Assembly: GCF_006345805.1 (NCBI RefSeq)
Contig: NW_021832220.1
Location: 124,001 to 188,000 of the forward strand
Direction: 5' to 3'
Length of the DNA stretch: 64,000 bases
From: Octopus sinensis
Taxonomy: Eukaryota
In this document: in pieces, positions 1-63,992 of the stretch
Numbering within the stretch: position 1 is the first letter of the stretch
How the letters are laid out: the number at the start of each line of letters is the position of its first letter
Made by a program: the position numbers and the translations under genes
The notes under the pieces: model-generated
The model's input: only the letters and a program-made list of their open reading frames with translations
Told to the model about the DNA's origin: nothing
Database searches by the model: none

Positions 1-3000
1 GTAATTGACTTGATTTATCTGAGTAATTGACTTCATTTATCTGAGTAATTGACTTGATTTATCTGAGTAATTGACTTCATTTATCTGAGTAATTGACTTG
101 ATTTATCTGAGTAATTGACTTGATTTATCTGAGTAATTGACTTGATTTATCTGAGTAATTGACTTCATTTATCTGAGTAATTGACTTGATTTATCTGAGT
201 AATTGACTTGATTTATCTGAGTAATTGACTTGATTTATCTGAGTAATTGACTTGATTTATCTGAGTAATTGACTTGATTTATCTGAGTAATTGACTTGAT
301 TTATCTGAGTAATTGACTTGATTTATCTGAGTAATTGACTTCATTTATCTGAGTAATTGACTTGATTTATCTGAGTAATTGACTTCATTTATCTGAGTAA
401 TTGACTTCATTTATCTGAGTAATTGACTTCATTTATCTGAGTAATTGACTTGATTTATCTGAGTAATTGACTTGATTTATCTGAGTAATTGACTTGATTT
501 ATCTGAGTAATTGACTTGATTTATCTGAGTAATTGACTTCATTTATCTGAGTAATTGACTTGATTTATCTGAGTAATTGACTTGATTTATCTGAGTAATT
601 GACTTCATTTATCTGAGTAATTGACTTGATTTATCTGAGTAATTGACTTGATTTATCTGAGTAATTGACTTCATTTATCTGAGTAATTGACTTGATTTAT
701 CTGAGTAATTGACTTGATTTATCTGAGTAATTGACTTGATTTATCTGAGTAATTGACTTGATTTATCTGAGTAATTGACTTGATTTATCTGAGTAATTGA
801 CTTCATTTATCTGAGTAATTGACTTGATTTATCTGAGTAATTGACTTGATTTATCTGAGTAATTGACTTCATTTATCTGAGTAATTGACTTGATTTATCT
901 GAGTAATTGACTTGATTTATCTGAGTAATTGACTTCATTTATCTGAGTAATTGACTTCATTTATCTGAGTAATTGACTTGATTTATCTGAGTAATTGACT
1001 TCATTTATCTGAGTAATTGACTTGATTTATCTGAGTAATTGACTTGATTTATCTGAGTAATTGACTTCATTTATCTGAGTAATTGACTTGATTTATCTGA
1101 GTAATTGACTTCATTTATCTGAGTAATTGACTTGATTTATCTGAGTAATTGACTTCATTTATCTGAGTAATTGACTTGATTTATCTGAGTAATTGACTTG
1201 ATTTATCTGAGTAATTGACTTCATTTATCTGAGTAATTGACTTGATTTATCTGAGTAATTGACTTGATTTATCTGAGTAATTGACTTCATTTATCTGAGT
1301 AATTGACTTCATTTATCTGAGTAATTGACTTGATTTATCTGAGTAATTGACTTCATTTATCTGAGTAATTGACTTCATTTATCTGAGTAATTGACTTCAT
1401 TTATCTGAGTAATTGACTTGATTTATCTGAGTAATTGACTTGATTTATCTGAGTAATTGACTTCATTTATCTGAGTAATTGACTTGATTTATCTGAGTAA
1501 TTGACTTGATTTATCTGAGTAATTGACTTCATTTATCTGAGTAATTGACTTGATTTATCTGAGTAATTGACTTGATTTATCTGAGTAATTGACTTGATTT
1601 ATCTGAGTAATTGACTTGATTTATCTGAGTAATTGACTTGATTTATCTGAGTAATTGACTTGATTTATCTGAGTAATTGACTTCATTTATCTGAGTAATT
1701 GACTTGATTTATCTGAGTAATTGACTTCATTTATCTGAGTAATTGACTTGATTTATCTGAGTAATTGACTTGATTTATCTGAGTAATTGACTTGATTTAT
1801 CTGAGTAATTGACTTCATTTATCTGAGTAATTGACTTCATTTATCTGAGTAATTGACTTCATTTATCTGAGTAATTGACTTGATTTATCTGAGTAATTGA
1901 CTTGATTTATCTGAGTAATTGACTTGATTTATCTGAGTAATTGACTTGATTTATCTGAGTAATTGACTTGATTTATCTGAGTAATTGACTTCATTTATCT
2001 GAGTAATTGACTTCATTTATCTGAGTAATTGACTTGATTTATCTGAGTAATTGACTTGATTTATCTGAGTAATTGACTTCATTTATCTGAGTAATTGACT
2101 TGATTTATCTGAGTAATTGACTTGATTTATCTGAGTAATTGACTTCATTTATCTGAGTAATTGACTTGATTTATCTGAGTAATTGACTTGATTTATCTGA
2201 GTAATTGACTTGATTTATCTGAGTAATTGACTTCATTTATCTGAGTAATTGACTTCATTTATCTGAGTAATTGACTTGATTTATCTGAGTAATTGACTTC
2301 ATTTATCTGAGTAATTGACTTCATTTATCTGAGTAATTGACTTGATTTATCTGAGTAATTGACTTCATTTATCTGAGTAATTGACTTGATTTATCTGAGT
2401 AATTGACTTCATTTATCTGAGTAATTGACTTGATTTATCTGAGTAATTGACTTCATTTATCTGAGTAATTGACTTGATTTATCTGAGTAATTGACTTGAT
2501 TTATCTGAGTAATTGACTTCATTTATCTGAGTAATTGACTTGATTTATCTGAGTAATTGACTTGATTTATCTGAGTAATTGACTTCATTTATCTGAGTAA
2601 TTGACTTGATTTATCTGAGTAATTGACTTGATTTATCTGAGTAATTGACTTCATTTATCTGAGTAATTGACTTGATTTATCTGAGTAATTGACTTCATTT
2701 ATCTGAGTAATTGACTTGATTTATCTGAGTAATTGACTTGATTTATCTGAGTAATTGACTTGATTTATCTGAGTAATTGACTTGATTTATCTGAGTAATT
2801 GACTTGATTTATCTGAGTAATTGACTTGATTTATCTGAGTAATTGACTTCATTTATCTGAGTAATTGACTTGATTTATCTGAGTAATTGACTTCATTTAT
2901 CTGAGTAATTGACTTCATTTATCTGAGTAATTGACTTGATTTATCTGAGTAATTGACTTCATTTATCTGAGTAATTGACTTCATTTATCTGAGTAATTGA

Positions 3001-7294: not shown

Positions 7295-7380
7295 ATTTTC
7301 CTGAAGAGAATGCTGCAAAATGGTCTCCTTATTCAGTCCGAATTAGGGAATTTGCAGCCTTTGAAACATGTGTAGAAAAT
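7295..7380 (+). ncRNA. Type I minimal hammerhead ribozyme (solo)
   Basis: attttc-CTGAAGA-gaa.gctgcaaa...tttgcagc.ttt-GAAA-C-atgt-G-TA/gaaaat. Stem I is a perfect 6 bp, stem II is long with G10.1-U11.1, and GUA cleavage is predicted after 7374. Confidence 0.75.
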
Positions 7381-13460: not shown

Positions 13461-13496
<36 letters not shown>

Positions 13497-13540
13497 GAAT
13501 AAATGAAAGAATGGAGTCGAGCGAAGATTTTAACAAAATT

Positions 13541-13635
13541 CCTTTACTCTCGACACATGTTTCGAAGGCAGCATACTCTTAATTCCGAAGGAATAAAGGG
13601 TGCAATATGCCATCTTCTCATCAGGAAAGATAAGG
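13541..13635 (-). ncRNA. Type I minimal hammerhead ribozyme downstream of Penelope ORF
   Basis: Minus strand: ccttatctttc-CTGATGA-gaag...cttc-GAAA-C-atgt-G-TC/gagagtaaagg. Extended stems I and II; GUC cleavage between 13552 and 13551. Confidence 0.85.
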
Positions 13636-14192
13636 AGCCGCTTTCAGCCTCAAGACGAACAAAAAATTTTGATGGTTGCCTACATTGCGCCCATAGTGAT
13701 AATGAGTGTTTTTTTAAATTAATCCGTCATATGCAATGACGTCAAAAATGGATAGAAGGAGGAAGTACTAAAAATAGGCAGGGGACAATATGTATGCTGC
13801 ATGTGTGGGGATGTGCGGGTGTTTGCTTGTGTTAAAGAGTGCGGGTGTTTATGTGTGCATATGAGTGTGTGTATATAACTGCATTTGTGTCTGTGTGTGT
13901 GTGTATGTGTGAATATGTGTGATTGTGTGTGTGTGTGGGGGAGACAAATGTCAGACATACTTATTAGTAAGGTGACAAATTTGTGTCTGTGTGTTTGATT
14001 GTGTGTGTGATAGAGAGAGAGGGGGGGAGAGGGAGAGAGAGAAAGCTAAACATACGTCAAAGATATTTAGTAGCAATTTAACATATAATGGAGCAGAAAA
14101 AAAGTTCTAAGGCATATAAAAGAATTTGTCTATGGCAGTGGTGTAGATGTGAAGTTAATTGTTAAAACTACAGTGGTTATCTATATCATTTA

Positions 14193-15280: not shown

Positions 15281-16650
15281 ATTATTTTTATTATTTCTAT
15301 TACGAGTAGTTTTCCACGAGAAACCACTCGTTGCAACCTTCAGGCATCAGTCAGCTAACCAGCGTCATCCTTCTGTTGGTACTGCATTGATCTCTATTTT
15401 ATTTTATTTTTGCCAAGTTCTTGGTAAAATCTTAAATGATAAACTTCTGGAAAGTTTTACAGATTTTTACAGTTCCAGTGATGGATTGGATCTGTAGTCT
15501 TTGAATTAGCTTTCTCCTTTCTAGTTTTGAGAAGCTTAATTTCTCAAGATTGGTATTTAGGCAGTGTGAAACAAATCCCAGAGCCCCAATAATTGCAGGT
15601 ATAAACCTGAACTTGTACTCTGGATAGAGTAACTGCAGATTTCTCAATTGTTCAGCATAGGTGTTCTCTTTTTCACTGATCTTCAGCTTTATGTTAACAT
15701 CCGCTGGGCTGCTGATTTCCACAACTGTACACAATTTCTCTTCTCTATCCCAAATCAGGTCTATTGTGTTTACATTTTATTGAGGTTTTCACTGGGACAT
15801 TCCACCAGTACTCCTTTATTATTATGAGTGGCTATGGCTTTTACAATACTGCAGGTTCTTATTTCTTTGTCCTCGGGCTTATCCTTCTGACGGATCGCAT
15901 TATAGTGTGTCCTAGCTACAACATCATGTCTCATCGGTAGATAACACTGTGATGATACTTTTGGACAACTGCTTATATTATGGTGATATCTTCAGTGTTA
16001 ACTCCACAAAATCTGCATCAGTTATCACATTTTGCTACTTTTCTCCGCATCCCTGTCCCTTTTGTGCATCAGGTGCTTGGTTGGTATTTCCTGTTCCTGA
16101 ATTGCAAATGCATACCATTCAAAGTGGGAGGTAGTAATCCGATTGTTGGTCCATGGTAGACTGCTTTGATGATCAACGTTACTATCATCTTGGAGCTTTC
16201 TAATAACATATCCATGCATGGTTTTTCTGCTCATATACGCTTAACCTTTCATCTGAATATACATTTCAGTAGAGTCATGCGACTTCTTTGTATTTATGGT
16301 CATCAAACAAGGAATGCTGCTCAAGGAGCTACTTTTCAAGTGTTATGATGTTGTCAGCCTCATGTATGCAAAACTCGCCAAGGGACGCACTTCAACACTT
16401 TGTAGTGAAAATATGTTGCCAAAGGGATATGATACAACATTCAAAGGCAGTCTGGATTGATGTTAAGCCTCTGCCACCTTCTTTCCATTTTAGGTAGAGG
16501 TGGTCTGTGCCAGTGTTGATGTGAAAATTATGTGTGCTGGTTAGTATCTTCTGGGTTTTCCCATCAATGGTCCCAGCGACCTCACAGGTTGTGTAGTAGG
16601 TAGTATGGATGTGGTTTAAATCAAGGCGGCAAGCTGGCAGAATCGTTATC
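15281..16650 (-). mobile_element. Dong/R4-like REL-endonuclease LINE, 5'-truncated, degraded
   Basis: MHGYV..SHFEWYAFAIQEQEI, EISSPADVNIKLKISEKENTY..FIPAIIGALG. Its 3' UTR ends in aataataa next to the PLE Asn-codon tract. Confidence 0.85.
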
Positions 16651-17579: not shown

Positions 17580-18950
17580 TTGCTGTTGCTCAAACAAGAG
17601 GTTGAGCACCTAAAGTCTGTTGTTGCTCTCTTACTGAATAAACAGTCTCCTGTTGACGCAGAGTCACCCTTGATTTCTTCCCTGGAGACGTCCAAACCGA
17701 AGGGAAAAAAATCGAGGCGGCCAAAGAAGGCGAAGGAACCGGCGGTCGTTTCTGCACATGATCGTTCCCGTGCGGATTCTTCCTCATCTGCCTTTTCGGT
17801 CCCGGAGGTTCCCCAACCTAATTTGAGGAGCGTAGACTCAAACCCACCTGAAGACCGTTGTTCTCCCCAAAAGAAGAAACGTCGTCAAAACTCCAGTGGG
17901 GCGGATTTAGCTATGAAACCTGACCACGATAAACGGTCTCCTGTTGACGCAGAGTCACCCTTGATTTCTTCCCTGGAGATGTCCAAACCGAAGGGAACAA
18001 AATCGAAGCGGCCAAAGAAGGCGAAGGAACCGGCGGTCGTTCCTGCACATGATCGTTCCTGTGCGGATTCTTCCTCATCTGCCTTTTCGGCCCCGGAGGT
18101 TCCCCAACCTAGTTCGAGGAGCGTAGACTCAAACCCACCTGAAGACCGTTGTTCTCCCCAAAAGAAGAAACGTAGTCAAAACTCCAGAGGGGCAGATTTG
18201 GCTATGAAACCTGATCACGATAATATCTGTTTGGATTCTCCTTCACTTGTCCTTCCCATTAATGCTATTGCTCAACCAATTCTGAACGATCTCGATGTGG
18301 GTTCATCTGGGGAGTGGTGCTCCCCCAAACCGAAGAAGAGGCAGTGCAGTTCCAAACCAGGCGGGAAAATTATGACCATTAAATCCATTCCGATCGACCC
18401 CACAGGCCGACATAAGTCCGATGGCTATGAAACCACCCTTTCGAAATCCTCCAATGAAGAATCGAATACCGCAGCTCATAGTAGAGAACTTTTTGCCCAC
18501 TCAAGATCGGCAATAATATATGGCAAAGCTGAATCCACCTGTGATACAGGCATAAACCGCCTAAAAGATGACATTAATTTTGTTTCCATTTTGGTTGGAA
18601 AATTGTTCTCTGTGAACGAAAATGTCAGTGTTCTTAAGGTCGCTCGGCTAGGAAGATTCCAAGCGAACCCAACCGCAGATACTAGACCACGCCCAATAAG
18701 GGTAATCTTTTCTTCTGATCAGGAGGCTTCAGTCTTTCTGAACAGAGCTCAGACGCATGCCTGGGAGGACCTCAATATGGGTTTTCGCGAGGAATACTCA
18801 CTAAGAGAGAGAATTCGCCGGAGGAACCTGATATCCGAGCTAAAGATGAGGAAACAAATGGGAGAGAAGGGTTTACGAATCCAAGTTGGACAGATAATCA
18901 AGTCCTACCTCTGGTCTCATGCTGTAGTGCTGACAGGGAAAGTGATGTGA
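17580..18950 (+). CDS. LINE ORF1 protein (456 aa) with internal 97-aa duplication
   Basis: Open ORF directly upstream of ORF2; C-terminal IIYG..E...RLG...RPRPIRVIF region typical of CR1-group ORF1. Confidence 0.8.
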   Translation: MLLLKQEVEHLKSVVALLLNKQSPVDAESPLISSLETSKPKGKKSRRPKKAKEPAVVSAHDRSRADSSSSAFSVPEVPQPNLRSVDSNPPEDRCSPQKKKRRQNSSGADLAMKPDHDKRSPVDAESPLISSLEMSKPKGTKSKRPKKAKEPAVVPAHDRSCADSSSSAFSAPEVPQPSSRSVDSNPPEDRCSPQKKKRSQNSRGADLAMKPDHDNICLDSPSLVLPINAIAQPILNDLDVGSSGEWCSPKPKKRQCSSKPGGKIMTIKSIPIDPTGRHKSDGYETTLSKSSNEESNTAAHSRELFAHSRSAIIYGKAESTCDTGINRLKDDINFVSILVGKLFSVNENVSVLKVARLGRFQANPTADTRPRPIRVIFSSDQEASVFLNRAQTHAWEDLNMGFREEYSLRERIRRRNLISELKMRKQMGEKGLRIQVGQIIKSYLWSHAVVLTGKVM

Positions 18951-21822
18951 GGGCAAATCGAAGTGAAGTTGATACCCCCGTCAACGATGCTATCTCTGAT
19001 GCCCTTTATTCTGCTTGTTTCCCAACTCCCGCCCCTCAGACTTCACAGCTCAGCATCGTCTACACCAACTCGTGCTCCTTATTCCCAAAGTTCAGTGAAC
19101 TATTTACACTGGCCCTACGCGACTCCCCTGATGTGATAGCTATCACCGAGACTTGGCTGACTCCAGCAGTAAAGGACTCAGAGATCCACCTGCAGGGCTA
19201 CGTCCTTTTCAGATGTGACAGAGGAAAAAGGCGAGGTGGAGGTGTTGCTGTGTATGTTAAGTCTGAGCACAAACCGTCCTGCGGTATTCTACCCACAAAT
19301 GCTCAACCTACAACCAAATTCGATGCCGTCTATTGCAAGCTGAGCCTATCTGAGTTTTGCCTGCCCGTGTTGGCTGTCTACAGGCCGCCTCTAGCCGACC
19401 CCCGGACGATGCTCATCTACTCGAAGCGATAAGATTCGTTTCAGCTTCGCATGACTGCTTGGTACTAGGCGACTTCAACGCTCCCACGATCGATTGGCCC
19501 GCATCAATTTGTACAACATCTTCCCTGTTCGGCCAGGCCCTTCTTGACGTGGCTGAAGATTGTTTTCTCTCGCAACATGTTGAATATCCGACAAGGCATC
19601 GGTCTGGGCAGCAGCCATCTATGCTAGATCTGGTATTCTCCTGCTATCCAAGATCAGTGTCAGACGTATCTGTGTGCGCCCCTCTTGCCAAGAGTGATCA
19701 TGTGGTCCTGAAGTTCGTCATGCACACAACTTTTTCCACGCCCACGATTACTTCGCTGCCACGTAGAGTCTTCTCTGCAATTAATCTTGAAATTCTAACC
19801 GAGGCTTCTGGACTGGCGTTCCCTGATGACGTTGTCCTCAGTTGACGAACTATGGTCATCCCTCAAAGCATATGTAATCTGTTTGACTGACCAGGCAGTT
19901 CCCGTTGGACTTCCCAAGAGGAAGAAACACAAGCCCTGGGTGACGAAGAAGGTTAAACGAGAACGTCGACTCAGAGATATTGCTTGGGCTGAATTCAAAA
20001 ATCTGGATTCGACTGCAGCTTTTGAGGTGTACAAAACTCAACGAGACCGAGCCGTGAAAATTGAAAAGAAAGAACGCTTCAGTTATGAATACAAAATCGC
20101 GGCAAATGCCAGTAGCAATCCAAAAACCTTCTTTGCCCATGTCCAGCGGAATTCCCGCTTGAACAACCAGATTGCAACGTTGGTAGACTCAACAGGCGTA
20201 TCGATTGAGGACCCTTATCAACAGAGTCAATTATTTGCCGAGGCTTTTTCAACTATTTTCAAACAAGATGATGGTCGTGAACCCCCTCCATTTGATAGAT
20301 CGGTACCTCCAATGCTTCGATTGATCATCACGCGGGACGAAGTCAAACGTGTTATTCAAGGCCTCGATGTCAACAAGGGTCACGGCCCTGACGGCATACA
20401 CCCACGGGTTATCAAAGCGTTGGCTCCGGTCATCTGCGAGCCCTTAACACGACTATTCAATATGTCATTGGTGACGGGTGTTATACCTGCAGACTGGAGA
20501 ACAGCGATAATCTGCCCAATTTTCAAGAAAGGGAGCCGCGAAGACCCGCTTAACTACCGACCGGTTTCCCTTACATCAATAATCAGCAAGATGTTCGAAA
20601 CCATCCTTAAGAAAAGTATGATGCTCCACCTCCTAAACACAGCCTCGATCACTGATTCCCAACACGCTTCGTGCCGAAGAGATCATGCTTGACCAACTTA
20701 CTAGTAATGGAAGAATTGGTGACGCGCATCCTCGATGATAGTGATGCTATTGACATCGTTTTATTGGACTTTGCCAAAGCTTTTGACTCGGTAAACCACC
20801 GCCTACTACTTGTCAAGCTTCAAGCATATAGTTTCCATCCGGATATTGTACGATGGGTTGGTGCCTTCCTCTCAGATCGCTCCTTCCAAGTTCAAGTTAA
20901 TGGTTCGCGGTCCGACGTCTCCAGTGCGAGCAGTGGCATGCCTCAAGGTTCAGTGCTTGGGCCCTTGTTGTTCTTAGTCTTCATAAATGACTTGCCCGAC
21001 GACCTCACGCAACACACCCTTCTATTTGCCGACGATATCAAACTGGTCGCTCCTCGCGGTAGTATAGAGGATCTTCGTCGATGCCTCCACCAAATTTGGA
21101 AGTGGTCTAACGATTGGGACCTGTGTCTGAACGTGTCAAAGTGCTGTCATCTGCCTGTCGGCTCTACTCCTGCAACTCAACTTGATTTCAAGCCGGGTCG
21201 TCTGCTGCTGGAGAGGACCGATCAGGTAAAGGACCTGGGTATCTTGGTGGATTCCTCCTTTTCGCCTTCGGCCCAGTGCGTCCATGCTGCCAACAAAGCG
21301 CGCGGAATTCTGTTTTTGATTCGACGGTCATTCGGAATGCTCACAGCAGCCATATTCCTGCCACTCTATGTCACGCTGGTGAGACCCATATTGGAGTATG
21401 GGATTCAAGCCTCTTCTCCTTATCTCCTCAAAGACATACAGCACCTCGAAAGAGTCCAGAGGCTGGCTACCCGCATGGTTCATGGTCTCAAAATTTGTCC
21501 TACGAAGAAGGCTGAGGACGCTCGACCTTTATTCTCTTGAAAAACGCCGCCGCCGTGGTGATCTCATTCTCGCCCACAACATCATAAGCGGGAAGTGTAA
21601 CCTCTCGAAAGAGCTGTTCTTCACTCCTGCTCCGGAGCGTCGGCTGCGGGGTCATTTGAAAAGCTCTACCTGCGACGATTTCATCTCAATCGAAGGAGAG
21701 GAGCTTTCTCCGTCCGGGTTGCGGATCCGTGGAACAAGCTGCCAGACGAGATGGTGAAGATGCCGACGACCGCTTTGTTAAAAGCCTCCCTGGACCTCAA
21801 GTGGACTGAACTCTTTACATGA
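18947..21822 (+). pseudogene. LINE ORF2 (APE endonuclease + reverse transcriptase), frameshifted as assembled
   Basis: YTN..SL, IAITETWL, GDFNAP, LDLVF, SDH; LDFAKAFDSV, PQGSVLGPLLF, FADDIK, LVRPILEY, WNKLP; terminal TGA 21820-21822. Confidence 0.93.
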
Positions 21823-24022: not shown

Positions 24023-25475
24023 ATAGAGCAATACTCAAGACAGAGCTGAATGCAAGAAACAGGATCGAAGCGATCAATGCATTAGCCATACCAATCGTGA
24101 CTTACAGTTTCAATATCGTTAACTGGTCAATTACTGAAATATGTCAGCTCGATAGAAAAATACGAAAAACTGTTGACAATGCATAGAATGCACCACCCTA
24201 AGGCAGATACAGAACGACTTTATTTGCCAAGAAAAGAGGGAGGCCATGGACTTTTACAACTGGCAATAACAATGAAGATTGCTACAGTTGGCCTAGACAC
24301 CTACCTGAAAAAGTCTGAGGACTGGATGTTAAAACTTGTCTCAAAACATGTAAACAAGCATCATACTCAGTAACAAAACAGGCAAAGGAATATCTAAGTG
24401 AATTCCGAATACAACAACTTTCGGAATTAGAGATAGACATACAAGAAACAAGCACAGAAAAAGCTAGGCGCATGAAAACCCATGCCAAAACTGCAGCCAT
24501 AAATATTCTGAATAATAAATTGCAAGAAAAACCTCTCTTTGGGTATTTGCCATAGAGAGCGAATAATGCAGATATTGACAAAGCCCTGACCCATCAATGG
24601 CTAATGGCCTCTGGCTTAAAATCTGAAACAGAAGGGTTTATCATAGCAGCTCAAGATCAATGCTTACCAACAAGAAACTACCAGGCCAACATATTAAAGA
24701 ACGGCAGTAGCCCAACATGTCGTGTATGCCAACAACAAAATGAAACCATTGATCATGTCTCCAAATGCAGTCTTCTAGCGCCTACAGAGTACCTCAACAG
24801 GCATGATAGAGCTGCACAATATATTCACTGGGTAATTTGCAAAAACCTGGATTTGCCCCATGAAAAAAACTGGTGGGAACACAATCCACCTCCAGTGCTT
24901 GAAAATGACCACATCTCACTCCTCTGGAACTTCACCATTCAAACTGACAGAAAGATAGATGCAAATAGGCCAGACATCATATTGAAAGACTTCAGACAAA
25001 GAACATGCCTCCTCATTGATATGACTGTCCCAATCGATATAAACGTATCTGTCAAGACCTACCAAAAACTGAGCAAATATAAAGATCTGGAAATAGAAAT
25101 CAGCAAAATGTGGAACCTGAAGACTAAAACAATACCTGTTGTCATAGGTGCCCTGGGAATGATAGCGAAAGGGGCTGATTGCTACCTAACTCAGATACCA
25201 GGAAACCCCAAAATGGCAGAAATTCAAAAGATAGTGCTCATGGGAACTGCTCATATCCTACGCAAAATACTCTCTATGTAATCCCAAGGTTTAAAACAAA
25301 CTTTAAAAAATTTTTTTTTTAAATTTATTTATTAGACATTCACTAGTACAACACCAAAAAAAAAAAAAACCAAATATATGGCATAACAACGTGAACTTCC
25401 AACCTGTTGTCTCTTGAGGTCTCTGGGTGAGACTTGGAGCCAACTTGTACAGACATAAAGCAAAAGTCAGACATA

Positions 25476-27737: not shown

Positions 27738-27800
<63 letters not shown>

Positions 27801-28924: not shown

Positions 28925-31510
28925 ATATGCTTTCGGTGTGAATGGCTTTATTATATGGCACCGTATTTTACAATCCTGTAAAGAATAATAATGGTATTTT
29001 ATATAAGCTTAAAGCCGTTCACCATGCAATGACTAAGGAAAATAGTCTAATCATGGGGCATATATGCCCTCAACAGAAAAAAGAAGGCTTTCCCATCAGC
29101 GTGGGATGTGAACCCACATTCCGTTGTTAACATGACTAAGTGTGTTACCTTCACACGCGGATGGGAAAGCCTACTTTTGTCTGTCGACATTATTAGACTA
29201 TTTTCCTAAGTAATTGCATGGTGAACGCCATAAACTTTGAGCTTATATAAAAATACCATTATTATTATTTACAGGATCCGAGTTGACAGTTCCTTGGTAG
29301 TTAAGGCAATTAGAAGCATGAAGACAGGGAAAGCCCCAGGCCCATCAGGAATCACTGCAGAGATGCTCAAATTATCTGGTAGTGTCGGTTACTCACCCGT
29401 ATAGTTAATCAGGTGATACATGAAGGAGTCATACCTAATGACTGGTGTAGCAGCATAATAGTCAACTGCTACAAAGGTAAAGGTGACGCTCTAGATACAA
29501 ATAATTACAGAGGTATCAAGCTGTTGGATCAGGTAATGAAGGTTACGGAGAGGGTCATAGCCCAACTAATTAGAGAGAGAGTTAGTTTAGATGAGATGCA
29601 GTTTGGTTTCGTGCCAGGGAAAAGTACCACTGATGCTATATTCCTGGTAAGGCAGCTGCAGGAGAAATACCTAGCCAAAGATAAGCCCCTGTACCTGGCT
29701 TTTGTTGACATGGAGAAAGCCTTTGACAGGGTCCCACAATCCCTTATCTGGTGCTCAATGAGGAAACTAGGGATAGATGAATGGTTAGTGAGAGCTGTGC
29801 AAGCCATGTACAAGGACGCCGCTAGTAAGGTGAGGGTTGGCAACGAGTACAGTGAAGAATTCCGGGTAGAGGTAAGGGTCCACCAAGGCTCAGTCCTCAG
29901 CCCCCTTCTATTTATCATAGTCCTCCAGGCAATAACGGAGGAATTCAAGACAGGATGCGCCTGGGAGCTCCTCTATGCTGATGACCTTGCTCTAATTGCT
30001 GAGTCATTATCAGAACTGGAGGAAAAGTTTCAAGTGTGGAAGCAAGGATTAGAATCGAAGGGCCTTAGAGTCAATCTAGCTAAAACCAAAGTCCTAATAA
30101 GTAGGAAGGTAGATAAATCACAAACGCCTTAAGGTAGATGGCAATGCTCGATCTGTAGAAAAGGTGTAGGTAGAGACTCTATAAGATGCACCAAGTGTAA
30201 GCTATGGACACATAAGAGGTGCAGCAATGTCAAAGGAAGGCTAACTAGGAAGATAGTTTTTGTTTGTGGCAGATGCTCAGGAGCAATAAACACTGAAAAT
30301 GCTCTGAGAGCAACTTCTGCCACATTCCAGGGAGAAAAACTAGAAATAGTTGATAGCTTCCATTACCTAGGTCACCAAGTCAGTAGCGGGGGCGGGTGTG
30401 CTGAAAGTGTAACTGCTAGAGTAAGAATAGCTTGGGCAAAGTTCAGAGAGCTCTTACCTCTGCTGGTGACAAAAAGCCTCTCGCTCAGAGTAAAAGGCAG
30501 ACTGTATGACACATGTGTACGAATAGTCATGCTACATGGCAGTGAAACATGGGCCGTAACCGCTGAGGATGTGCATAAGCTTGCAAGAAATGAAGCCAGT
30601 ATGCTCCAATGTATGTGTAATGTCAGTGTTCATACTCGACAGAGTGTAAGTACCTTGAGAGAAATGTTGGACCTAAGAAGCATCAGTTGTGGTGTGCAAG
30701 AGAGACCTTTGTGCTGGTATGGTCATGTGACAAGAATGGATGAAGATAGTTGTGTGAAAATGTGCCACACCCTAGCGGTTGAGGGAATCCGTAGAAGAGG
30801 CAGACCCAGAAAAACCTGGGACGAAGTGGTGAAGCACGACCTTCGAACTTTAGGTCTCACTGACAAAATGACTAGAGACCGAGAGCTTTGGAAGTATGCT
30901 GTGCATGAGAAGACCCGGCAGGACAAGTGAGACCATAACCGTGGCCTCTACATGGGATGGAGCCAGCCTACGTATGCATACCTTCCCTTCTTGGGACACA
31001 AAACTCTACTTGTGAAGACCTGTTAAGGCAAGTGAGAATCAAAATCAATCAACTTCAATGGAAATTGCAGCTGTGATACCAGTGCCGGTGGTACGTAAGA
31101 GAACCATCCGAACGTGGCCGTTGCCAGCGCCGCCCCGACTGGCCTCGTGCTGGTGGCACATAAAAAGCACCATCCGATTGTGGCCGTTGCCAGCGTCGCC
31201 TGGCCCCGTGCCAGTGGCATGTAAAAAGCACCATCCAATCTTGGCCGTTTGCCAGCCTCATCTGGCACCTGTGCCGGTGGCACATAAAAAGCACCCACTA
31301 CACTCACGGAGTGGTTGGCGTTAGGAAGGGCATCCAGTCGTAGAAACATTGTCAGATCAGACTGGGCCTGGTGCAGCCTTCTGGCTTCCCAGACCCCAGT
31401 TGAACCGTCCAACCCATGCTAGCATGGAAAGCGGACGCTAAACGAAGATGATGATGATGATGATTGTAAAATACAGCGTCGTATAACAAAACCATTTGCA
31501 TTGAAAGCAT
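28925..31510. repeat. Foldback element (left arm 28925-29105; right arm 29155-29277 + 31465-31510) split by RTE insertion
   Basis: Left arm gtattttacaatcctgtaaa is the reverse complement of tttacaggat (ending 29277) joined to tgtaaaatac (starting 31465). Confidence 0.8.
29278..31464 (+). mobile_element. 5'-truncated RTE LINE (RT, C-terminus, 3' UTR, (GAT)n tail)
   Basis: ORFs 29413-30132 (KAFDRVP, HQGSVLSPLLF, LYADDL) and 30466-30930 (LHGSETW, WYGHV, RRGRPRKTW); tail ends 31464. Confidence 0.96.
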
Positions 31511-31719: not shown

Positions 31720-31759
<40 letters not shown>

Positions 31760-33178: not shown

Positions 33179-34300
33179 TAGTTTTATTTTTATAGCATGC
33201 TTTCACTTCACTACCGAGCGCAGCTCTGTGTGCTTTGGGTATGTGTTCTGATTTGTTGTGATGCTCTGATGGTTAATGTATGGAAAGTGTTCTGTGTAGG
33301 ATGTGTGCAGTGCCTAGTAGTGCAATTTTCTGTATGTTATATGTGTTTGTAAGTCCTGGTGTTTTTGTTATGTATTTGTCTGAATATTTTTTTATCATGC
33401 CTCATGCACCTACTATGATAGGAATTGTTTCTGTTTTTAGATTCCACATTCTGGTTACCTCTATTTCCAGGTCTTTGTATTTTGAGAGTTTCTCCATTTC
33501 TTTTAGAGACACGTTGTCATCTGCCGGTATTGATACATCAATTAGAAAGCATTTTTTTTCTTCATGATCTCTGACAACTATATCTGGCCTGTTGGCCTTA
33601 ATTTCTCTATCAGTGTGTATCGGCATATCCCAGAGTATGGTTGCTTTCTCGTTTTCTGTGACCTTTTCTGGTGTGTGCCTATACCATCTTTTTTCTGTTG
33701 TTATTCCATAATGTTGGCATAGCTTCCAATGTATGTAGGTTCCAACTCTGTCATGTCTGTGAATATATTCCTTCTTAGCCAGGACTGGGCAGCTAGAGAT
33801 AATATGATTTATTGTTTCTTGTCCATCTCCACATATTCTGCAGTTACTTGTTATATTTCTTTTCATTACATGTTTTTGGTAATTTCTGGTGGGGAGGCTT
33901 TGGTCTTGTGCTGCAATTAAAAATCCCTCTGTTTCTGCTTTGAGTGCTGAGCTTCTCAACCATTGCTGGGATTTTTCTTTGTCTATTTCTTTTGCGTTTA
34001 GTTTAGTGCAGTATTTACCATGAAGGGGCTTTTCTTGCCATCGTTTTATCATGGTTTGTTGCTGTTCTATTTTTAGTTTGGATTTCATTTGTTTTATAGC
34101 TTTTGTTGTTTCTTCATCTTCTTCTTCTTCATATTTATTAGGTGGTATGATTTCTTGTTTGTATTTGTCAGCTTCCTTAAATACTGAGAACAGTTTTTTG
34201 TTTTGCTTGTGTTTTGCCGCTATTTGTATCAGTTTTCCTTCCTTCTGAAGTAGATATTTTTGCAGTCCTATGGTGGTTATTTTATAGTAGTTTTCCAGTT
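33175..34300 (-). mobile_element. Dong/R4-like LINE, 5'-truncated, between (TTA)n tracts
   Basis: ORF 33402-34088: KPLHGKY, ETEGFLIAAQDQ, CRIC..H..C, RHD, RPDI, KYKDLEIEV. Confidence 0.93.
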
Positions 34301-35340: not shown

Positions 35341-35779
35341 GGTGCTGGCATGTGAACATATAGACCCAAACTTTCCTCTTTATGCTATAAAAGGTAATTT
35401 TAAAATGTTGAAGTAGATTTGCACTCTGAACTTTGAACTCGTAAATACCTCACGAGCAGTGACTACCCAAACAGAATAATGGGTTGTTGGAGGGTTGTTA
35501 CCTGTGTGGCTCAAAGTGTTATCTACCAGGAGTAGCAGGGTATCACCAAGAAATGATGGCTTCAGCAAGACCTTATATATACTATATTACATTATAATAT
35601 TCAATTATAATTTAATATAATGTATCTCGTATGTGTTTATGTACGTATAAATGTATTTGTATTTCTCTCGGACTACATATATATATATATATATATATAG
35701 GATGTGGGTGTGGTTGGAGGTGTGGGGGTATGTGGGAATGGGGTGTGGGTGGAAGGGGTGTTAATGAAGAGAGGAAGTA

Positions 35780-36030
35780 GGTGTCAGATAAAAAGAGGAG
35801 AGGAGGAGAGTTGAGCCCATGTGGGGCAAACGAATGAAGAGAGAAGATTAATTCTTGTTCATGCCGAGGACGGGAGTCCGGATGGATTCTGTGCAAAGAC
35901 AATCCGAACACAGATAGGTGTTGTAGTGAATGACCACTAGAGCGGAAATGGCGCGAGACCAGGGTGTCAATTGCTGAGTCTAGATTATTCATGCTGCAAT
36001 AGTGGCAGCATGAAATTATTTCTGGCAAAA
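35780..36030 (-). mobile_element. Penelope-like GIY-YIG C-terminal fragment
   Basis: LVSRHFRSSGHSLQHLSVFGL...R..EQELIFSL..FAPHGLN. Confidence 0.8.
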
Positions 36031-36265
36031 TGTTTGAGAAAAATTATATTAATATATCTTGTCTGTTGAAAACCCATGTTTATTGCAACTGAAGACAGCA
36101 GAGTATTTAAATTGATATAATGCTTGCATTGTTCAATTAAATGGAACCACTTGAAATGGTCGTATTGCACATCCTGTTACTTATTTTGATTTTATTCACC
36201 TTACTTCGAGCTGTGCAGATAATACTGGACTGACCTGGTGCCTCAAATGAATCTTAATTATTTCT

Positions 36266-36297
<32 letters not shown>

Positions 36298-46685: not shown

Positions 46686-46727
<42 letters not shown>

Positions 46728-46874
46728 ACACAAATATAAGAGAGTGGTCAATATATTGCTCACTCTAGCACCAGTTAATCCAAAAGGTTTCAACCACGAA
46801 GATACATGTTTCCCATGAAAGCCAGTACGACTGTTAGCTCACACGGACAGGGCAAGTAAAAAATAACAAAAATA

Positions 46875-46970
46875 CAGATTATTTTGGGATAATTGTTTCG
46901 CTATTAATGAATTAAATGTAATATTACTTACAAAAAAATCCATTTGTAGCTCGTCAGCCAAGACTATCTG
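46875..46970 (-). ncRNA. Hammerhead ribozyme, inverted unit, stem III variant (G16.2 to A)
   Basis: Reads GAAAC-AATT-ATC instead of GAAAC-AATT-GTC; position 46890 is t where the consensus predicts c. Confidence 0.8.
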
Positions 46971-47581
46971 GATGAAATCCACTCAATCACACGCCAGATT
47001 TTACCATAACGATAAATACGCGTGTGGTTCAATTGATTACATCCGACGTTATAATTCAAATGCCCCAACCAACAGCGCGCCAAACTTTCACGGAAAACAA
47101 ATACAGCATTTAGAAATAAATGCAGCATAATTATAATTAATTAATAAGGGTGAGAGAATTAGATACTAATTTAATAGTATATTTATTCAACACCAAGTGG
47201 CCTAGTGCTACGAGAAACCTGGATTATTATAATATTTTATAACATATTACAATACTTTTACAAAACAAATATAAGAGAGTGGTCAATATATTGCTCACTC
47301 TAGCACCAGTTAATCCAAAAGGTTTCAATCCAGGTTTCTCGTAGCACTAGGCCACTTGGTGTTGAATAAATATACTATTAAATTAGTATCTAATTCTCTC
47401 ACCCTTATTAATTAATTATAATTATGCTGCATTTATTTCTAAATGCTGTATTTGTTTTCCGTGAAAGTTTGGCGCGCTGTTGGTTGGGGCATTTGAATTA
47501 TAACGTCGGATGTAATCAATTGAACCACACGCGTATTTATCGTTATGGTAAAATCTGGCGTGTGATTGAGTGGATTTCATC

Positions 47582-47677
47582 CAGATAGTCTTGGCTGACG
47601 AGCTACAAATGGATTTTTTTGTAAGTAATATTACATTTAATTCATTAATAGCGAAACAATTGTCCCAAAATAATCTG
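47582..47677 (+). ncRNA. Type I hammerhead ribozyme, unit 1
   Basis: cagatagtcttgg-CTGACGA-gcta...tagc-GAAA-C-aatt-G-TC/ccaaaataatctg; cleavage predicted after 47664. Confidence 0.92.
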
Positions 47678-48116
47678 TATTTTTGTTATTTTTTACTTGC
47701 CCTGTCCGTGTGAGCTAACAGTCGTACTGGCTTTCATGGGAAACATGTATCTTCGTGGTTGAAACCTTTTGGATTAACTGGTGCTAGAGTGAGCAATATA
47801 TTGACCACTCTCTTATATTTGTTTTGTAAAAGTATTGTAATATGTTATAAAATATTATAATAATCCAGGTTTCTCGTAGCACTAGGCCACTTGGTGTTGA
47901 ATAAATATACTATTAAATTAGTATCTAATTCTCTCACCCTTATTAATTAATTATAATTATGCTGCATTTATTTCTAAATGCTGTATTTGTTTTCCGTGAA
48001 AGTTTGGCGCGCTGTTGGTTGGGGCATTTGAATTATAACGTCGGATGTAATCAATTGAACCACACGCGTATTTATCGTTATGGTAAAATCTGGCGTGTGA
48101 TTGAGTGGATTTCATC

Positions 48117-48212
48117 CAGATAGTCTTGGCTGACGAGCTACAAATGGATTTTTTTGTAAGTAATATTACATTTAATTCATTAATAGCGAAACAATTGTCC
48201 CAAAATAATCTG
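48117..48212 (+). ncRNA. Type I hammerhead ribozyme, unit 2
   Basis: Same motif; GTC 48197-48199. Confidence 0.92.
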
Positions 48213-48651
48213 TATTTTTGTTATTTTTTACTTGCCCTGTCCGTGTGAGCTAACAGTCGTACTGGCTTTCATGGGAAACATGTATCTTCGTGGTTGAAAC
48301 CTTTTGGATTAACTGGTGCTAGAGTGAGCAATATATTGACCACTCTCTTATATTTGTTTTGTAAAAGTATTGTAATATGTTATAAAATATTATAATAATC
48401 CAGGTTTCTCGTAGCACTAGGCCACTTGGTGTTGAATAAATATACTATTAAATTAGTATCTAATTCTCTCACCCTTATTAATTAATTATAATTATGCTGC
48501 ATTTATTTCTAAATGCTGTATTTGTTTTCCGTGAAAGTTTGGCGCGCTGTTGGTTGGGGCATTTGAATTATAACGTCGGATGTAATCAATTGAACCACAC
48601 GCGTATTTATCGTTATGGTAAAATCTGGCGTGTGATTGAGTGGATTTCATC

Positions 48652-48747
48652 CAGATAGTCTTGGCTGACGAGCTACAAATGGATTTTTTTGTAAGTAATA
48701 TTACATTTAATTCATTAATAGCGAAACAATTGTCCCAAAATAATCTG
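48652..48747 (+). ncRNA. Type I hammerhead ribozyme, unit 3
   Basis: Same motif; cleavage after 48734. Confidence 0.92.
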
Positions 48748-49186
48748 TATTTTTGTTATTTTTTACTTGCCCTGTCCGTGTGAGCTAACAGTCGTACTGG
48801 CTTTCATGGGAAACATGTATCTTCGTGGTTGAAACCTTTTGGATTAACTGGTGCTAGAGTGAGCAATATATTGACCACTCTCTTATATTTGTTTTGTAAA
48901 AGTATTGTAATATGTTATAAAATATTATAATAATCCAGGTTTCTCGTAGCACTAGGCCACTTGGTGTTGAATAAATATACTATTAAATTAGTATCTAATT
49001 CTCTCACCCTTATTAATTAATTATAATTATGCTGCATTTATTTCTAAATGCTGTATTTGTTTTCCGTGAAAGTTTGGTGCGCTGTTGGTTGGGGCATTTG
49101 AATTATAACGTCGGATGTAATCAATTGAACCACACGCGTATTTATCGTTATGGTAAAATCTGGCGTGTGATTGAGTGGATTTCATC

Positions 49187-49282
49187 CAGATAGTCTTGGC
49201 TGACGAGCTACAAATGGATTTTTTTGTAAGTAATATTACATTTAATTCATTAATAGCGAAACAATTGTCCCAAAATAATCTG
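49187..49282 (+). ncRNA. Type I hammerhead ribozyme, unit 4
   Basis: Same motif; cleavage after 49269. Confidence 0.92.
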
Positions 49283-49721
49283 TATTTTTGTTATTTTTTA
49301 CTTGCCCTGTCCGTGTGAGCTAACAGTCGTACTGGCTTTCATGGGAAACATGTATCTTCGTGGTTGAAACCTTTTGGATTAACTGGTGCTAGAGTGAGCA
49401 ATATATTGACCACTCTCTTATATTTGTTTTGTAAAAGTATTGTAATATGTTATAAAATATTATAATAATCCAGGTTTCTCGTAGCACTAGGCCACTTGGT
49501 GTTGAATAAATATACTATTAAATTAGTATCTAATTCTCTCACCCTTATTAATTAATTATAATTATGCTGCATTTATTTCTAAATGCTGTATTTGTTTTCC
49601 GTGAAAGTTTGGCGCGCTGTTGGTTGGGGCATTTGAATTATAACGTCGGATGTAATCAATTGAACCACACGCGTATTTATCGTTATGGTAAAATCTGGCG
49701 TGTGATTGAGTGGATTTCATC

Positions 49722-49816
49722 CAGATAGTCTTGGCTGACGAGCTACAATGGATTTTTTTGTAAGTAATATTACATTTAATTCATTAATAGCGAAACAATT
49801 GTCCCAAAATAATCTG
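49722..49816 (+). ncRNA. Type I hammerhead ribozyme, unit 5
   Basis: Same motif with one A missing in loop 2; GTC 49801-49803. Confidence 0.92.
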
Positions 49817-50474
49817 TATTTTTGTTATTTTTTACTTGCCCTGTCCGTGTGAGCTAACAGTCGTACTGGCTTTCATGGGAAACATGTATCTTCGTGGTTG
49901 AAACCTTTTGGATTAACTGGTGCTAGAGTGAGCAATATATTGACCACTCTCTTATATTTGTTTTGTAAAAGTATTGTAATATGTTATAAAATATTATAAT
50001 AATCCAGGTTTCTCGTAGCACTAGGCCACTTGGTGTTGAATAAATATACTATTAAATTAGTATCTAATTCTCTCACCCTTATTAATTAATTATATATATA
50101 TATACTTCCAAGTAGAAGATGATTATGTGTCTGATGAATCAGGTATAAATAATCACAAAGAAAGTTAACTGTTAGCTAGACTATGTATGAATAAAGATGG
50201 ATGCTAATCAGGAACAATAGCCAAAATGAAAGACTAAATACTTTGAACTGTTGAATTCTATCAAAGGCAAAACAGCACACATTTTGAAGAAATGTAATAT
50301 TGATTTAATTACCCCAGTACTCTGCTGGTACTCGATAAAACAAGTACTTGAAGAGTATTGGAGTAATTAAATCGATTTTATCCATCGTACTCAAAAGTAT
50401 ATGAGCTTGTCGCTTTGATAGAATTCGGTATTTGAAATTATTAATCACTGCAGAAAATGTTAGTGTATTCTTAC

Positions 50475-63949: not shown

Positions 63950-63992
<43 letters not shown>

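What the first reader, a model, noticed from the sequence alone, without database searches (positions are those of the whole stretch)
46731..50094. 535-bp tandem array with one self-cleaving hammerhead per unit: a retrozyme-like element
Seen: five direct 535-bp units, each with a complete type I hammerhead. Each has CUGACGA, a 4-bp stem II, GAAA, a 1-bp stem III closed by the palindromic tetraloop AAUU, a GUC cleavage site and a 13-position stem I. Units are almost identical: by eye I found only a C/T at 49078 and one missing A near 49749. The unit has no ORF in the track. Established: minimal type I hammerheads with palindromic loop 3 occur in Penelope-like element pLTRs and in metazoan non-LTR retrozymes (newt satellite 2, schistosome Sm-alpha, cricket pDo500). 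They cleave as dimers, release monomers that circularise, and are retrotransposed in trans. Inference: read-through gives a 535-nt monomer (47665-48199) and possibly a circRNA, and the array is a recent rolling-circle reverse-transcription product, probably using Penelope RT. I cannot tell whether this family has been described.
Basis: partly seen in the sequence, partly recalled or inferred. Interest (0 to 1): 0.92.

Follow-up and report, generated by a model that had tools for sequence, protein, structure and literature searches.

The report
Octopus hammerhead-ribozyme retrozyme array
This is a young tandem array of a 535-bp non-coding repeat in an octopus genome, each unit carrying a self-cleaving hammerhead ribozyme; it is a new example of a known class of mobile element (animal "retrozymes") and its insertion scars match those left by Penelope-like retrotransposons.

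Summary
The + strand carries 5.17 near-identical 535-bp units (47327-50094). Each of the five has a full type I hammerhead: CUGACGA, G10.1-C11.1, GAAA, a C-AAUU-G helix III, GUC, and a stem I with 11 of 13 positions paired. The first 605 bp of the reported span (46724-47328) is not direct. It is an inverted, 5'-truncated copy with a sixth, mutated hammerhead (GUC to AUC). Helix II is a 51-nt imperfect hairpin, not a 4-bp stem.

My descriptor expects about 0.02 hits per shuffled window and finds 7-8. Rfam Hammerhead_1 matches full-length at 27.4 bits (gathering score 34) only when a short stretch is searched.

The window is octopus DNA. It holds three further hammerheads of the same build (helix II 54-56 nt). 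Two lie in 3' ends of Penelope-like element (PLE) fragments, one of them just downstream of a GIY-YIG endonuclease ORF, and at least one abuts (TA)n.

The array lies between (TA)18 and (TA)7. Its two arms bracket a missing 33-nt AU-rich stretch, as twin priming would leave.

Best reading: a non-autonomous PLE derivative (non-LTR retrozyme), inserted recently by target-primed reverse transcription. It is a new member of a known kind. Cleavage, circles and copy number are untested.

The parts
46690..46725 (.). (TA)18 microsatellite abutting the left end of the insertion. It follows (TATG)n and is the presumed target or priming site.
46724..47328 (-). Inverted, 5'-truncated arm of 605 nt. On the minus strand it reads unit 95..535 then 1..164. 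Its RNA-sense 3' end faces the left (TA)n.
   Evidence: (I1-I7). Variants: G->A at 46890 and T->G at 46729.
46875..46970 (-). Sixth hammerhead copy, in the inverted arm. G16.2->A makes the site AUC and breaks the C-G pair and the palindrome of helix III, so it is probably crippled.
   Evidence: The local PLE-hammerhead model R1 scores it only 11.7 bits.
47327..47328 (.). Junction of the inverted and direct arms, with an AA/TT microhomology. Unit positions 165-197, the most AU-rich stretch of the unit, are missing between the two arms.
47327..50094 (+). Direct head-to-tail arm of 2768 nt, or 5.17 units: unit 198..535, four full units, then 1..291.
47665..48199 (+). Reference 535-nt monomer, running from the first base after GUC to the next GUC. 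GC is 33.3%, there is no ORF, and the RNA is predicted to be highly self-paired.
47582..47677 (+). Hammerhead 1, from the stem I 5' strand to the stem I 3' strand. Cleavage is predicted after C47664.
48117..48212 (+). Hammerhead 2. Cleavage is predicted after C48199.
   Evidence: Rfam RF00163 scores 27.4 bits.
48652..48747 (+). Hammerhead 3. Cleavage is predicted after C48734.
49187..49282 (+). Hammerhead 4. Cleavage is predicted after C49269.
49722..49816 (+). Hammerhead 5, with one A missing in helix II (about 49747). Cleavage is predicted after C49803.
   Evidence: 15 bits.
50091..50104 (.). (TA)7 abutting the right end. The direct arm ends in the unit's own TATA at unit 288-291.

Best explanation
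The locus is one insertion of a non-autonomous Penelope-like-element derivative, that is, a non-LTR retrozyme, in an octopus genome.

Proposed life cycle:
1. The array is transcribed on the + strand as a multimer.
2. Neighbouring hammerheads pair through the palindrome ACAAUUGU to form an 8-bp helix III (a double hammerhead) and cut after each GUC.
3. [quoted passage not shown]
4. The monomer refolds into a stable, branched structure in which GACGA of the core pairs with UUGUC at the cleavage site. That switches the ribozyme off and holds the two ends side by side for ligation into a circle.

Proposed origin of this copy:
1. It was made by target-primed reverse transcription at a (TA)n microsatellite, with the enzymes supplied in trans by an autonomous PLE (reverse transcriptase plus GIY-YIG endonuclease).
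2. One TA-ended DNA 3' end annealed at the unit's TATA (unit 288-291) and copied about 5.2 unit lengths of a circular or multimeric template.
3. The other DNA end annealed at the AU-rich stretch (unit 165-197) and copied 605 nt in the opposite orientation. This is twin priming.
4. The result is an inverted 5'-truncated arm next to a direct multimer.

Shown by the sequence: the anatomy, the motif, the flanks, the junction geometry, and the presence of PLE fragments with hammerheads of the same build.
Inferred: transcription, cleavage, circularisation, the identity of the enzymes, and a single-event origin.
For: Hammerhead:
- All conserved core positions, G10.1-C11.1 and a GUC site are present in 5 of 5 direct units.
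- The descriptor expects 0.017-0.02 hits per shuffled window and finds 7-8.
- Rfam RF00163 aligns over model positions 1-45 at 27.4 bits, E = 4.7e-5, with a 39-nt insertion in loop 2.
- A covariance model built only from octopus PLE hammerheads places the array copies among the best ten matches in the window, at 17.8 bits for four copies and 15 for the fifth.

Dimer logic:
- The single-motif active fold is -16.2 kcal/mol, against -23.6 for the alternative fold that buries the core.
- ACAAUUGU forms an 8-bp self-duplex.
- This is the behaviour described for minimal PLE and amphibian hammerheads (PMC4209133; PMC7229834).

Retrozyme features:
- No ORF and no protein homologues.
- GC 33.3%.
- Circular MFE is -149.4 kcal/mol on the + strand (z = -7.4, 21 G-U pairs) against -112.1 on the minus strand (z = -5.6, 8 G-U pairs).

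PLE-type insertion:
- (TA)18 and (TA)7 lie on the flanks.
- An inverted 5'-truncated copy sits at the 5' end. Craig et al. 2021 describe this arrangement for PLEs, together with multicopy head-to-tail insertions of non-autonomous members and (TA)n targets.
- The inverted arm ends at unit 164 and the direct arm starts at unit 198. They bracket the most AT-rich 30-nt window of the unit.

PLEs nearby:
- ORF 14193-15113(-) aligns at E = 7e-12 to P0003, which has a Pfam GIY-YIG hit above the cut-off.
- A hammerhead follows it at 13538-13638(-), and its 3' end abuts (TA)n.
- A related fragment lies at 6802-7442(+).
- Homologous copies in Octopus sinensis keep the core and show 4 compensatory pairs.

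Youth: 2 differences in 2768 nt of the direct arm and 2 in the inverted arm.
Against: - No transcript, cleavage or circle data exist here.
- No second copy of the unit was found in the 64-kb window. None was found in metagenome or viral collections or through pseudo-ORF protein searches and look-ups. Dispersal in the genome, which defines a mobile family, is therefore untested. No eukaryotic nucleotide database was available.
- The unit shows no sequence similarity to the PLE 3' ends in the window beyond the hammerhead core. Non-autonomous elements often share 3' ends with their partner.
- No intact PLE reverse transcriptase lies in the window. All RVT_1 hits there are in ORFs that show no PLE features, apparently LINE-type elements.
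- Rfam stays below its gathering score. The local model's E-value for the whole window is only 0.09.
- PLE-type minimal hammerheads cleave poorly in vitro, even as dimers.
- The twin-priming geometry would arise by chance about 8% of the time, and (TA)n runs are common here (32 in the window).
- The 30-40-bp 'tail' often seen at PLE insertions was not recognised.
Confidence: 0.7

Rival explanations
1. A local minisatellite. A single PLE-derived or retrozyme monomer landed here, and the array then grew at the DNA level by unequal crossing-over, replication slippage or gene conversion. The inverted arm would come from a separate DNA rearrangement. The hammerhead may or may not still be used.
For: Li, Clavereau and Pollet (bioRxiv 2026) favour local amplification into tandem repeats after a PLE-derived seed. 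Near-identity of the units could reflect homogenisation. No other copy is seen in the window.
Against: Both array ends sit at arbitrary unit phases (164 and 291), each in a TA-like stretch and each abutting (TA)n. The inverted arm ends 33 nt short of where the direct arm begins, across the AU-rich stretch. Neither feature is predicted by unequal crossing-over. DNA-level growth from a seed would not produce the inverted 5'-truncated copy that marks PLE insertions.
Confidence: 0.15
2. An assembly artefact. The copy number, the inverted arm, or both were produced by misassembly of long reads, for example a chimeric or palindromic read, or expansion of a shorter array.
For: Craig et al. 2021 note that the complex tandem and inverted PLE structures often cause assembly problems. 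One of the two differences in the direct arm is a single-base deletion in an A run, a typical long-read error.
Against: The inverted arm is not a zero-spacer palindrome. It is offset by about 101 nt from the direct arm (I4). It has its own substitutions (46890, 46729) and ends in a long (TA)18 run that continues into unique flank. Chimeric-read artefacts are normally symmetric about their centre.
Confidence: 0.06
3. A chance hammerhead-like motif in a tandem repeat of unrelated origin, such as a satellite or a Helitron-borne array. The ribozyme reading would then be spurious.
For: Rfam gives no hit at its gathering score. Helix II is atypically long. Helitrons insert at AT/TA sites and can carry tandem arrays.
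Against: The descriptor expects 0.02 hits per window. RF00163 aligns full-length at E = 4.7e-5. Three other loci in the same window have the same architecture, two of them in PLE 3' ends conserved in O. sinensis with compensatory changes. No Helitron termini (5' TC, 3' hairpin plus CTRR) are seen at the array ends.
Confidence: 0.04

Closest known systems
Metazoan non-LTR retrozymes (Cervera & de la Pena 2020, NAR, PMC7229834), which include newt satellite 2 and axolotl Rtz_331
   Same: Tandem non-coding repeats with one type I hammerhead per unit. Low GC. A monomer RNA predicted to be highly self-paired. Helix III of one base pair closed by a palindromic tetraloop, implying cleavage as a dimer, as in axolotl HHR_Amex1 and newt. 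Coexistence with PLEs.
   Different: The unit is 535 nt, against about 170-400 nt reported for invertebrates, though it is inside the 51-972 bp range of the 2026 preprint. Helix II is a 51-nt hairpin rather than about 4 bp with a loop that contacts loop 1. No loop 1/loop 2 tertiary motif is recognisable. Octopus is not among the hosts described in the papers I could search. Expression and circles are untested here.
Minimal hammerheads in the pseudo-LTRs of Penelope-like elements (Cervera & de la Pena 2014, PMC4209133)
   Same: Type I topology. Conserved G10.1-C11.1. Palindromic 15.2-16.2 and loop 3. A helix II larger than canonical. Dimeric design. Pairs of motifs on opposite strands a few hundred bp apart.
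   Different: The PLE motifs described there have a helix II of 6-8 bp and often an extra base between positions 9 and 10.1. Here helix II spans 51 nt with no extra base. This element has no RT/EN ORF between its repeats.
PLE insertion architecture, including non-autonomous PLEs such as MRC1 of Chlamydomonas (Craig et al. 2021, PMC8557442)
   Same: Partial or multicopy head-to-tail insertion. An adjacent inverted 5'-truncated copy. Insertion in (TA)n microsatellites.
   Different: The (TA)n preference was reported for Naiad-clade elements, which lack canonical hammerheads. The PLE fragments here have a C-terminal GIY-YIG domain plus a hammerhead. Their clade was not determined. No 30-40-bp tail was seen.
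L1 twin priming (inversion with 5' truncation). Named from my own knowledge of Ostertag & Kazazian 2001, not retrieved here.
   Same: An inverted 5' segment joined to a direct 3' segment. A small deletion of template sequence at the point where the second primer would anneal. Microhomology at the junction.
   Different: A different retroelement class and endonuclease. The template is a repeat (circular or multimeric), so the geometry is defined only modulo 535 nt.

Membership tests
Hammerhead ribozyme, type I | Conserved core C3-U4-G5-A6-N7-G8-A9, G12-A13-A14, an A15.1-U16.1 pair, and H17 (not G) at the cleavage site. | tested here: met
   CUGACGA ... GAAA-C-AAUU-G-UC in all five direct units. 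The inverted copy keeps the core but has A at 16.2.
Hammerhead ribozyme, type I | Three helices around the core with helix I open, and a G10.1-C11.1 pair at the base of helix II. | tested here: met
   Stem I has 11 of 13 pairs. Helix II has a GCUA/UAGC base within a 51-nt hairpin. Helix III is A-U plus C-G with loop AAUU.
Hammerhead ribozyme, type I | Match to the curated Rfam model RF00163 at or above its gathering score. | tested here: not met
   27.4 bits against a gathering score of 34. The match covers the full model 1-45, E = 4.7e-5 in a 181-nt search, and carries the penalty of a 39-nt insertion in loop 2. No hit appeared in the wider searches, where the filters removed it. I file the motif as a hammerhead on core, helices and context, not on this score.
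Hammerhead ribozyme, type I | Covariation supporting the helices across diverged members. | not testable with these tools
   All six copies are about 99.9% identical, and no other family member could be retrieved. Only the neighbouring PLE hammerheads show covariation, with 4 compensatory pairs in 4 sequences.
Hammerhead ribozyme, type I | Site-specific self-cleavage. | not testable with these tools
   Needs in vitro transcription of monomer and dimer templates.
Metazoan non-LTR retrozyme | [quoted passage not shown] | tested here: met
   5.17 direct units of 535 bp with one hammerhead each.
Metazoan non-LTR retrozyme | Non-coding and low in GC (below 45-50%). | tested here: met
   The longest ORF is 54 aa and has no homologues. 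GC is 33.3%.
Metazoan non-LTR retrozyme | The monomer RNA is highly self-paired. | tested here: met
   By prediction only: z = -6.75 for the linear form and -7.4 for the circular form, with 65% of bases paired.
Metazoan non-LTR retrozyme | Expressed as linear and circular monomer RNAs. | not testable with these tools
   No transcriptome was accessible. Exact-sequence look-ups found nothing.
Metazoan non-LTR retrozyme | Many dispersed genomic copies, showing mobility. | not testable with these tools
   This is the only locus in the 64-kb window. No eukaryotic genome database was available.
Non-autonomous Penelope-like element insertion | Partial or multicopy tandem with an adjacent inverted 5'-truncated copy. 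| tested here: met
   Inverted arm 46724-47328 next to direct arm 47327-50094. The description is from PMC8557442.
Non-autonomous Penelope-like element insertion | Insertion into a microsatellite, (TA)n for some clades. | tested here: met
   (TA)18 on the left and (TA)7 on the right. PLE fragment A in the window and its O. sinensis relative L001 also end at (TA)n.
Non-autonomous Penelope-like element insertion | Sequence similarity to the 3' end or pLTR of an autonomous partner. | tested here: not met
   No similarity beyond the hammerhead core to the PLE 3' ends available in the window and in three O. sinensis loci. Only a few PLE copies could be compared, so a partner elsewhere in the genome is not excluded.
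Non-autonomous Penelope-like element insertion | An extension (tail) of 30-40 bp at one end. | tested here: inconclusive
   None is recognisable by eye at either end. Without other copies the true termini cannot be defined.

The most novel reading that the evidence does not exclude
The locus may be a fresh footprint of how retrozyme arrays are made: one target-primed event at a (TA)n site, primed from both DNA ends on UA-rich stretches inside a circular (or multimeric) 535-nt ribozyme RNA. That would tie retrozyme mobilisation directly to PLE-style integration rather than to later DNA-level expansion. A further speculation follows from the 50-56-nt helix II hairpin. It is shared by four hammerhead families in this window: two are homologous PLE families, and the array unit and the solo element show no detectable sequence similarity to them or to each other. 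The hairpin could be the structural handle by which the octopus PLE reverse transcriptase recognises templates in trans.
Probability: 0.3. Interest if true: 0.6.

Novelty: new member of a known kind. Interest (0 to 1): 0.42.

Why it matters
Retrozymes are a source of abundant small circular RNAs in animals. How they are mobilised is still argued: reverse transcription of a circle into tandem cDNA (PMC7229834) or local DNA-level amplification of a PLE-derived seed (bioRxiv 10.64898/2026.07.22.740005). This octopus locus is young enough to have kept its insertion scars: (TA)n flanks, an inverted truncated arm, a 33-nt gap at an AU-rich stretch, and junction microhomology. It therefore offers a concrete case to test against the family's other copies.

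It also shows that octopus hammerheads carry a helix II long enough for standard Rfam scans to miss them. Cephalopod ribozymes and retrozymes may therefore be under-counted. No paper in the searchable library links octopus with hammerhead ribozymes.

Tried and rejected
- Tandem Repeats Finder misses the array because its longest period is 500.
- Rfam on the whole window, and on 3.8 kb at E <= 10, gave only microsatellite and hairpin noise such as mir-297 and MIR4416. I reject these as chance matches to (TA)n and to the inverted junction.
- Exact look-ups of unit ORFs and of larger window ORFs in public assemblies found nothing.
- A protein search with all unit pseudo-ORFs concatenated found nothing.
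- Pattern scans of the metagenome and viral collections found nothing.
- No paralogous empty site for the flanks exists in the window or in the O. sinensis loci.
- There is no synteny between the window and the three O. sinensis loci, so the species could not be fixed beyond 'an octopus'.
- Pfam does not see a GIY-YIG domain directly in the window ORFs. Identity had to go through the relative P0003.
- Local alignment of the unit with the solo hammerhead element scores no better than shuffles.
- Helitron origin rejected, because no terminal signatures are present.
- Snap-back self-priming of the cDNA remains possible for the inverted arm. It would need a 430-nt loop (I1). I rank it below twin priming but cannot exclude it.
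- The model R1 hit at 6645-6727 is a plain hairpin without a core, so it is a false positive.
Full report
**1. What is in the sequence**

- The direct arm, 47327-50094 (+), reads unit positions 198..535, then four full units, then 1..291. That is 2768 nt, or 5.17 units.
- The inverted arm, 46724-47328, reads on the minus strand unit 95..535 and then 1..164, 605 nt in all.
- The arms meet at 47327/47328 with an AA/TT microhomology.

Tandem Repeats Finder missed the array because its longest period is 500.

The direct arm differs from the reference unit at two places: C->T at 49078 and one missing A at about 49747, in helix II. The inverted arm differs at 46890 (G->A) and 46729 (T->G). (TA)18 abuts the left end (46690-46725) and (TA)7 the right end (50091-50104).

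**2. The hammerhead**

Each direct unit reads as follows:
- 5' CAGAUAGUCUUGG (stem I, 5' strand)
- CUGACGA
- GCUA...UAGC (helix II)
- GAAA
- C-AAUU-G
- UC, followed by the cleavage site
- CCAAAAUAAUCUG (stem I, 3' strand)

All core positions are canonical, as are G10.1-C11.1 and the A15.1-U16.1 pair. Stem I has 11 pairs in 13 positions. Helix II is not a 4-bp stem with a large loop. It is a 51-nt imperfect hairpin of -12.6 kcal/mol.

A strict descriptor found 7 hits in the window, against 0.017 per dinucleotide-shuffled window. A relaxed one found 8 against 0.02.

Rfam gave nothing on the whole window or on 3.8 kb. When only 181 nt were searched, RF00163 Hammerhead_1 aligned over its whole length (positions 1-45) at 27.4 bits and E = 4.7e-5. 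That is below the gathering score of 34, because of a 39-nt insertion in loop 2. The earlier misses were therefore a filter effect. The match is real but sub-threshold.

**3. Predicted behaviour of the RNA**

Taken alone, the motif prefers a fold in which GACGA of the core pairs with UUGUC at the cleavage site. That fold is -23.6 kcal/mol, against -16.2 for the active fold. The segment A15.1-C-AAUU-G-U16.1 is an 8-nt palindrome, so two copies can form an 8-bp helix III.

This is the dimeric design described for newt and axolotl hammerheads and for PLE hammerheads, which cleave poorly or not at all as single motifs.

The 535-nt monomer is strongly structured.
- Linear form: z = -6.75.
- Circular form, + strand: -149.4 kcal/mol, z = -7.4, with 21 G-U pairs.
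- Circular form, minus strand: -112.1 kcal/mol, z = -5.6, with 8 G-U pairs.

This favours the hammerhead-sense strand as the RNA that matters. In the circular fold the nick lies between stem I and the GACGA/UUGUC helix. That geometry would hold the ends together for ligation, though this is an inference.

The sixth copy, in the inverted arm, has G16.2->A. The site becomes AUC, the C-G pair of helix III is lost and the palindrome is broken.

**4. Context**

The window is animal DNA full of retrotransposon fragments. The only protein relatives of ORF 14193-15113(-) are from Octopus sinensis, so the host is an octopus. The species could not be fixed.

That ORF aligns at E = 7e-12 to P0003, a protein with a Pfam GIY-YIG hit above the cut-off. 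Upstream of that domain P0003 carries a further conserved stretch, which by eye resembles the C-terminal part of PLE reverse transcriptases (not tested here). I read the ORF as a 5'-truncated Penelope-like element.

About 570 nt downstream of its stop lies a hammerhead (13538-13638, minus strand: CUGAUGA ... GAAACAUGUGUC). The element ends about 55 nt further on, against (TA)n. A homologous 3' fragment with a hammerhead lies at 6802-7442 (+).

Copies of both families were fetched from O. sinensis (L001-L003). The four hammerheads keep the core, are 93% paired, and show four pairs with compensatory changes.

A covariance model built from these four (R1) scored as follows in the window:
- the two PLE hammerheads, about 110 bits each;
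- a previously unseen hammerhead at 51941-52043 (minus strand), 23.9 bits, E = 0.0027;
- four of the array copies, 17.8 bits each, E = 0.09 for the whole window and 0.00056 locally.

All four hammerhead families in the window have a helix II spanning 50-56 nt, although the descriptor allowed 9-75.

**5. How the locus most likely arose**

Craig et al. 2021 describe PLE insertions as partial tandems, often with an inverted 5'-truncated copy at the 5' end. They report multicopy head-to-tail insertions for non-autonomous members and (TA)n targets for some clades. This locus has all three features.

The geometry adds a further point.
- The inverted arm's RNA-sense 3' end is at unit 164.
- The direct arm's 5' end is at unit 198.
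- The 33 nt missing between them lie within the most AT-rich 30-nt window of the unit, which is 93% AT and holds four TA-alternating runs.
- The direct arm's 3' end sits in the unit's TATA at 288-291.

Twin priming would leave exactly this. Two TA-ended DNA 3' ends anneal to UA-rich stretches of one RNA template, and the first cDNA stops where the second primer sits. A gap of 40 nt or less would arise by chance about 8% of the time, so this is supportive, not decisive.

Neither terminus coincides with the ribozyme cleavage site. The template was therefore not a processed linear monomer primed at its 3' end. It was a circle or an uncleaved multimer. The data cannot separate these two, nor exclude snap-back priming of the inverted arm.

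Four differences in 3.37 kb point to a recent event, or a single one.

**6. Comparison with what is known**

The element fits the non-LTR retrozymes of Cervera and de la Pena 2020 and the proposal that these are non-autonomous PLE derivatives (Li et al. 2026).
- The unit length of 535 nt is above the 170-400 nt range given for invertebrates but inside the 51-972 bp range of the preprint. Five to six units is typical.
- The differences are the very long helix II, the lack of recognisable loop-loop contacts, the octopus host (no paper found), and the clean insertion scars.
- The unit shares no sequence with the few PLE 3' ends I could compare, so no partner has been identified.

**7. Verdict**

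The object belongs to a described class. Activity, circular RNA, dispersal in the genome and the identity of the mobilising enzyme remain untested, because no eukaryotic nucleotide or transcript database was available. Interest is moderate.

Noticed in passing
window 13497-15113 (-): A 5'-truncated Penelope-like element. The ORF 14193-15113 has a degenerate GIY-YIG domain and an N-rich low-complexity insert where relatives have a Cys-rich linker. A hammerhead follows at 13538-13638 (CUGAUGA...GAAACAUGUGUC), and the 3' end abuts (TA)n. It is 79% identical to an O. sinensis copy (L001 5858-7677), which also ends at (TA)n.
   Followed up: yes
window 6802-7442 (+): The 3' fragment of a related PLE family, with a hammerhead at 7287-7388 (CUGAAGA, GUA site, G-U at the base of helix II). 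It is 93% identical to O. sinensis L003 7673-8337, where it follows the gene for P0002.
   Followed up: yes
window 51941-52043 (-), within an AT-rich stretch of about 51700-52375: A solitary hammerhead (CUGAUGA, 56-nt helix II, GAAAC-GCAU-GUA, 5-bp stem I) only 1.9 kb from the array, on the opposite strand. It shows no sequence similarity to the array unit. It could be a monomeric retrozyme or a pLTR remnant ending at (TTA)n(TA)n.
   Followed up: partly
window hammerheads at 7301-7374, 13552-13624, 47595-49803 and 51955-52029; also L001 7536-7608: Every hammerhead found has a helix II spanning 50-56 nt, although the descriptor allowed 9-75 nt. The two PLE families are homologous to each other, while the array unit and the solo element show no detectable similarity to them or to each other. 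This looks like a lineage-specific architecture, and it explains why standard Rfam scans miss these motifs.
   Followed up: partly
window 35700-36265 (-): A fragment of about 570 bp whose ORF (35612-36028) resembles, by eye, the C-terminal half of a PLE GIY-YIG endonuclease (...GLN). It is flanked by (TA)n on both sides (36266-36279 and 35678-35699) and no hammerhead was detected. Pfam gives no hit.
   Followed up: partly
window 48080-48260, compared with the whole window: A point of method. Rfam RF00163 hits the array hammerhead only when a short stretch is searched (27.4 bits). The same motif is filtered out in the 64-kb and 3.8-kb searches.
   Followed up: yes
window 11876-13183 (-), 17580-21540 (+), 29413-30930 (+), 24604-25281 (+), 33402-34088 (-), 52879-53433 (+): Several retrotransposon fragments that appear to be of LINE type. 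Pfam RVT_1 hits ORFs 20671-21540 and 29413-30132, and zf-RVT hits 33402-34088 (weakly 24604-25281). 17580-21540 is a long, frameshifted copy. No Penelope-type RT was recognised in the window.
   Followed up: partly
window, 32 sites (for example 13470-13495, 27745-27788, 31726-31751, 63957-63988): (TA)n runs of six or more repeats occur about once every 2 kb, often next to (CA)n or (TATG)n. The target type apparently used by the hammerhead-bearing elements is therefore abundant.
   Followed up: no
window 6640-6733: A self-complementary hairpin of about 95 nt (86% complementary), just upstream of a (TA)n run and of PLE fragment B. It scored 25 bits with model R1 but has no hammerhead core.
   Followed up: no
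window 15504-16570 and 59184-59995: Two copies (80-86% identical) of another interspersed repeat. One of them sits immediately upstream of the truncated PLE at 15113.
   Followed up: no
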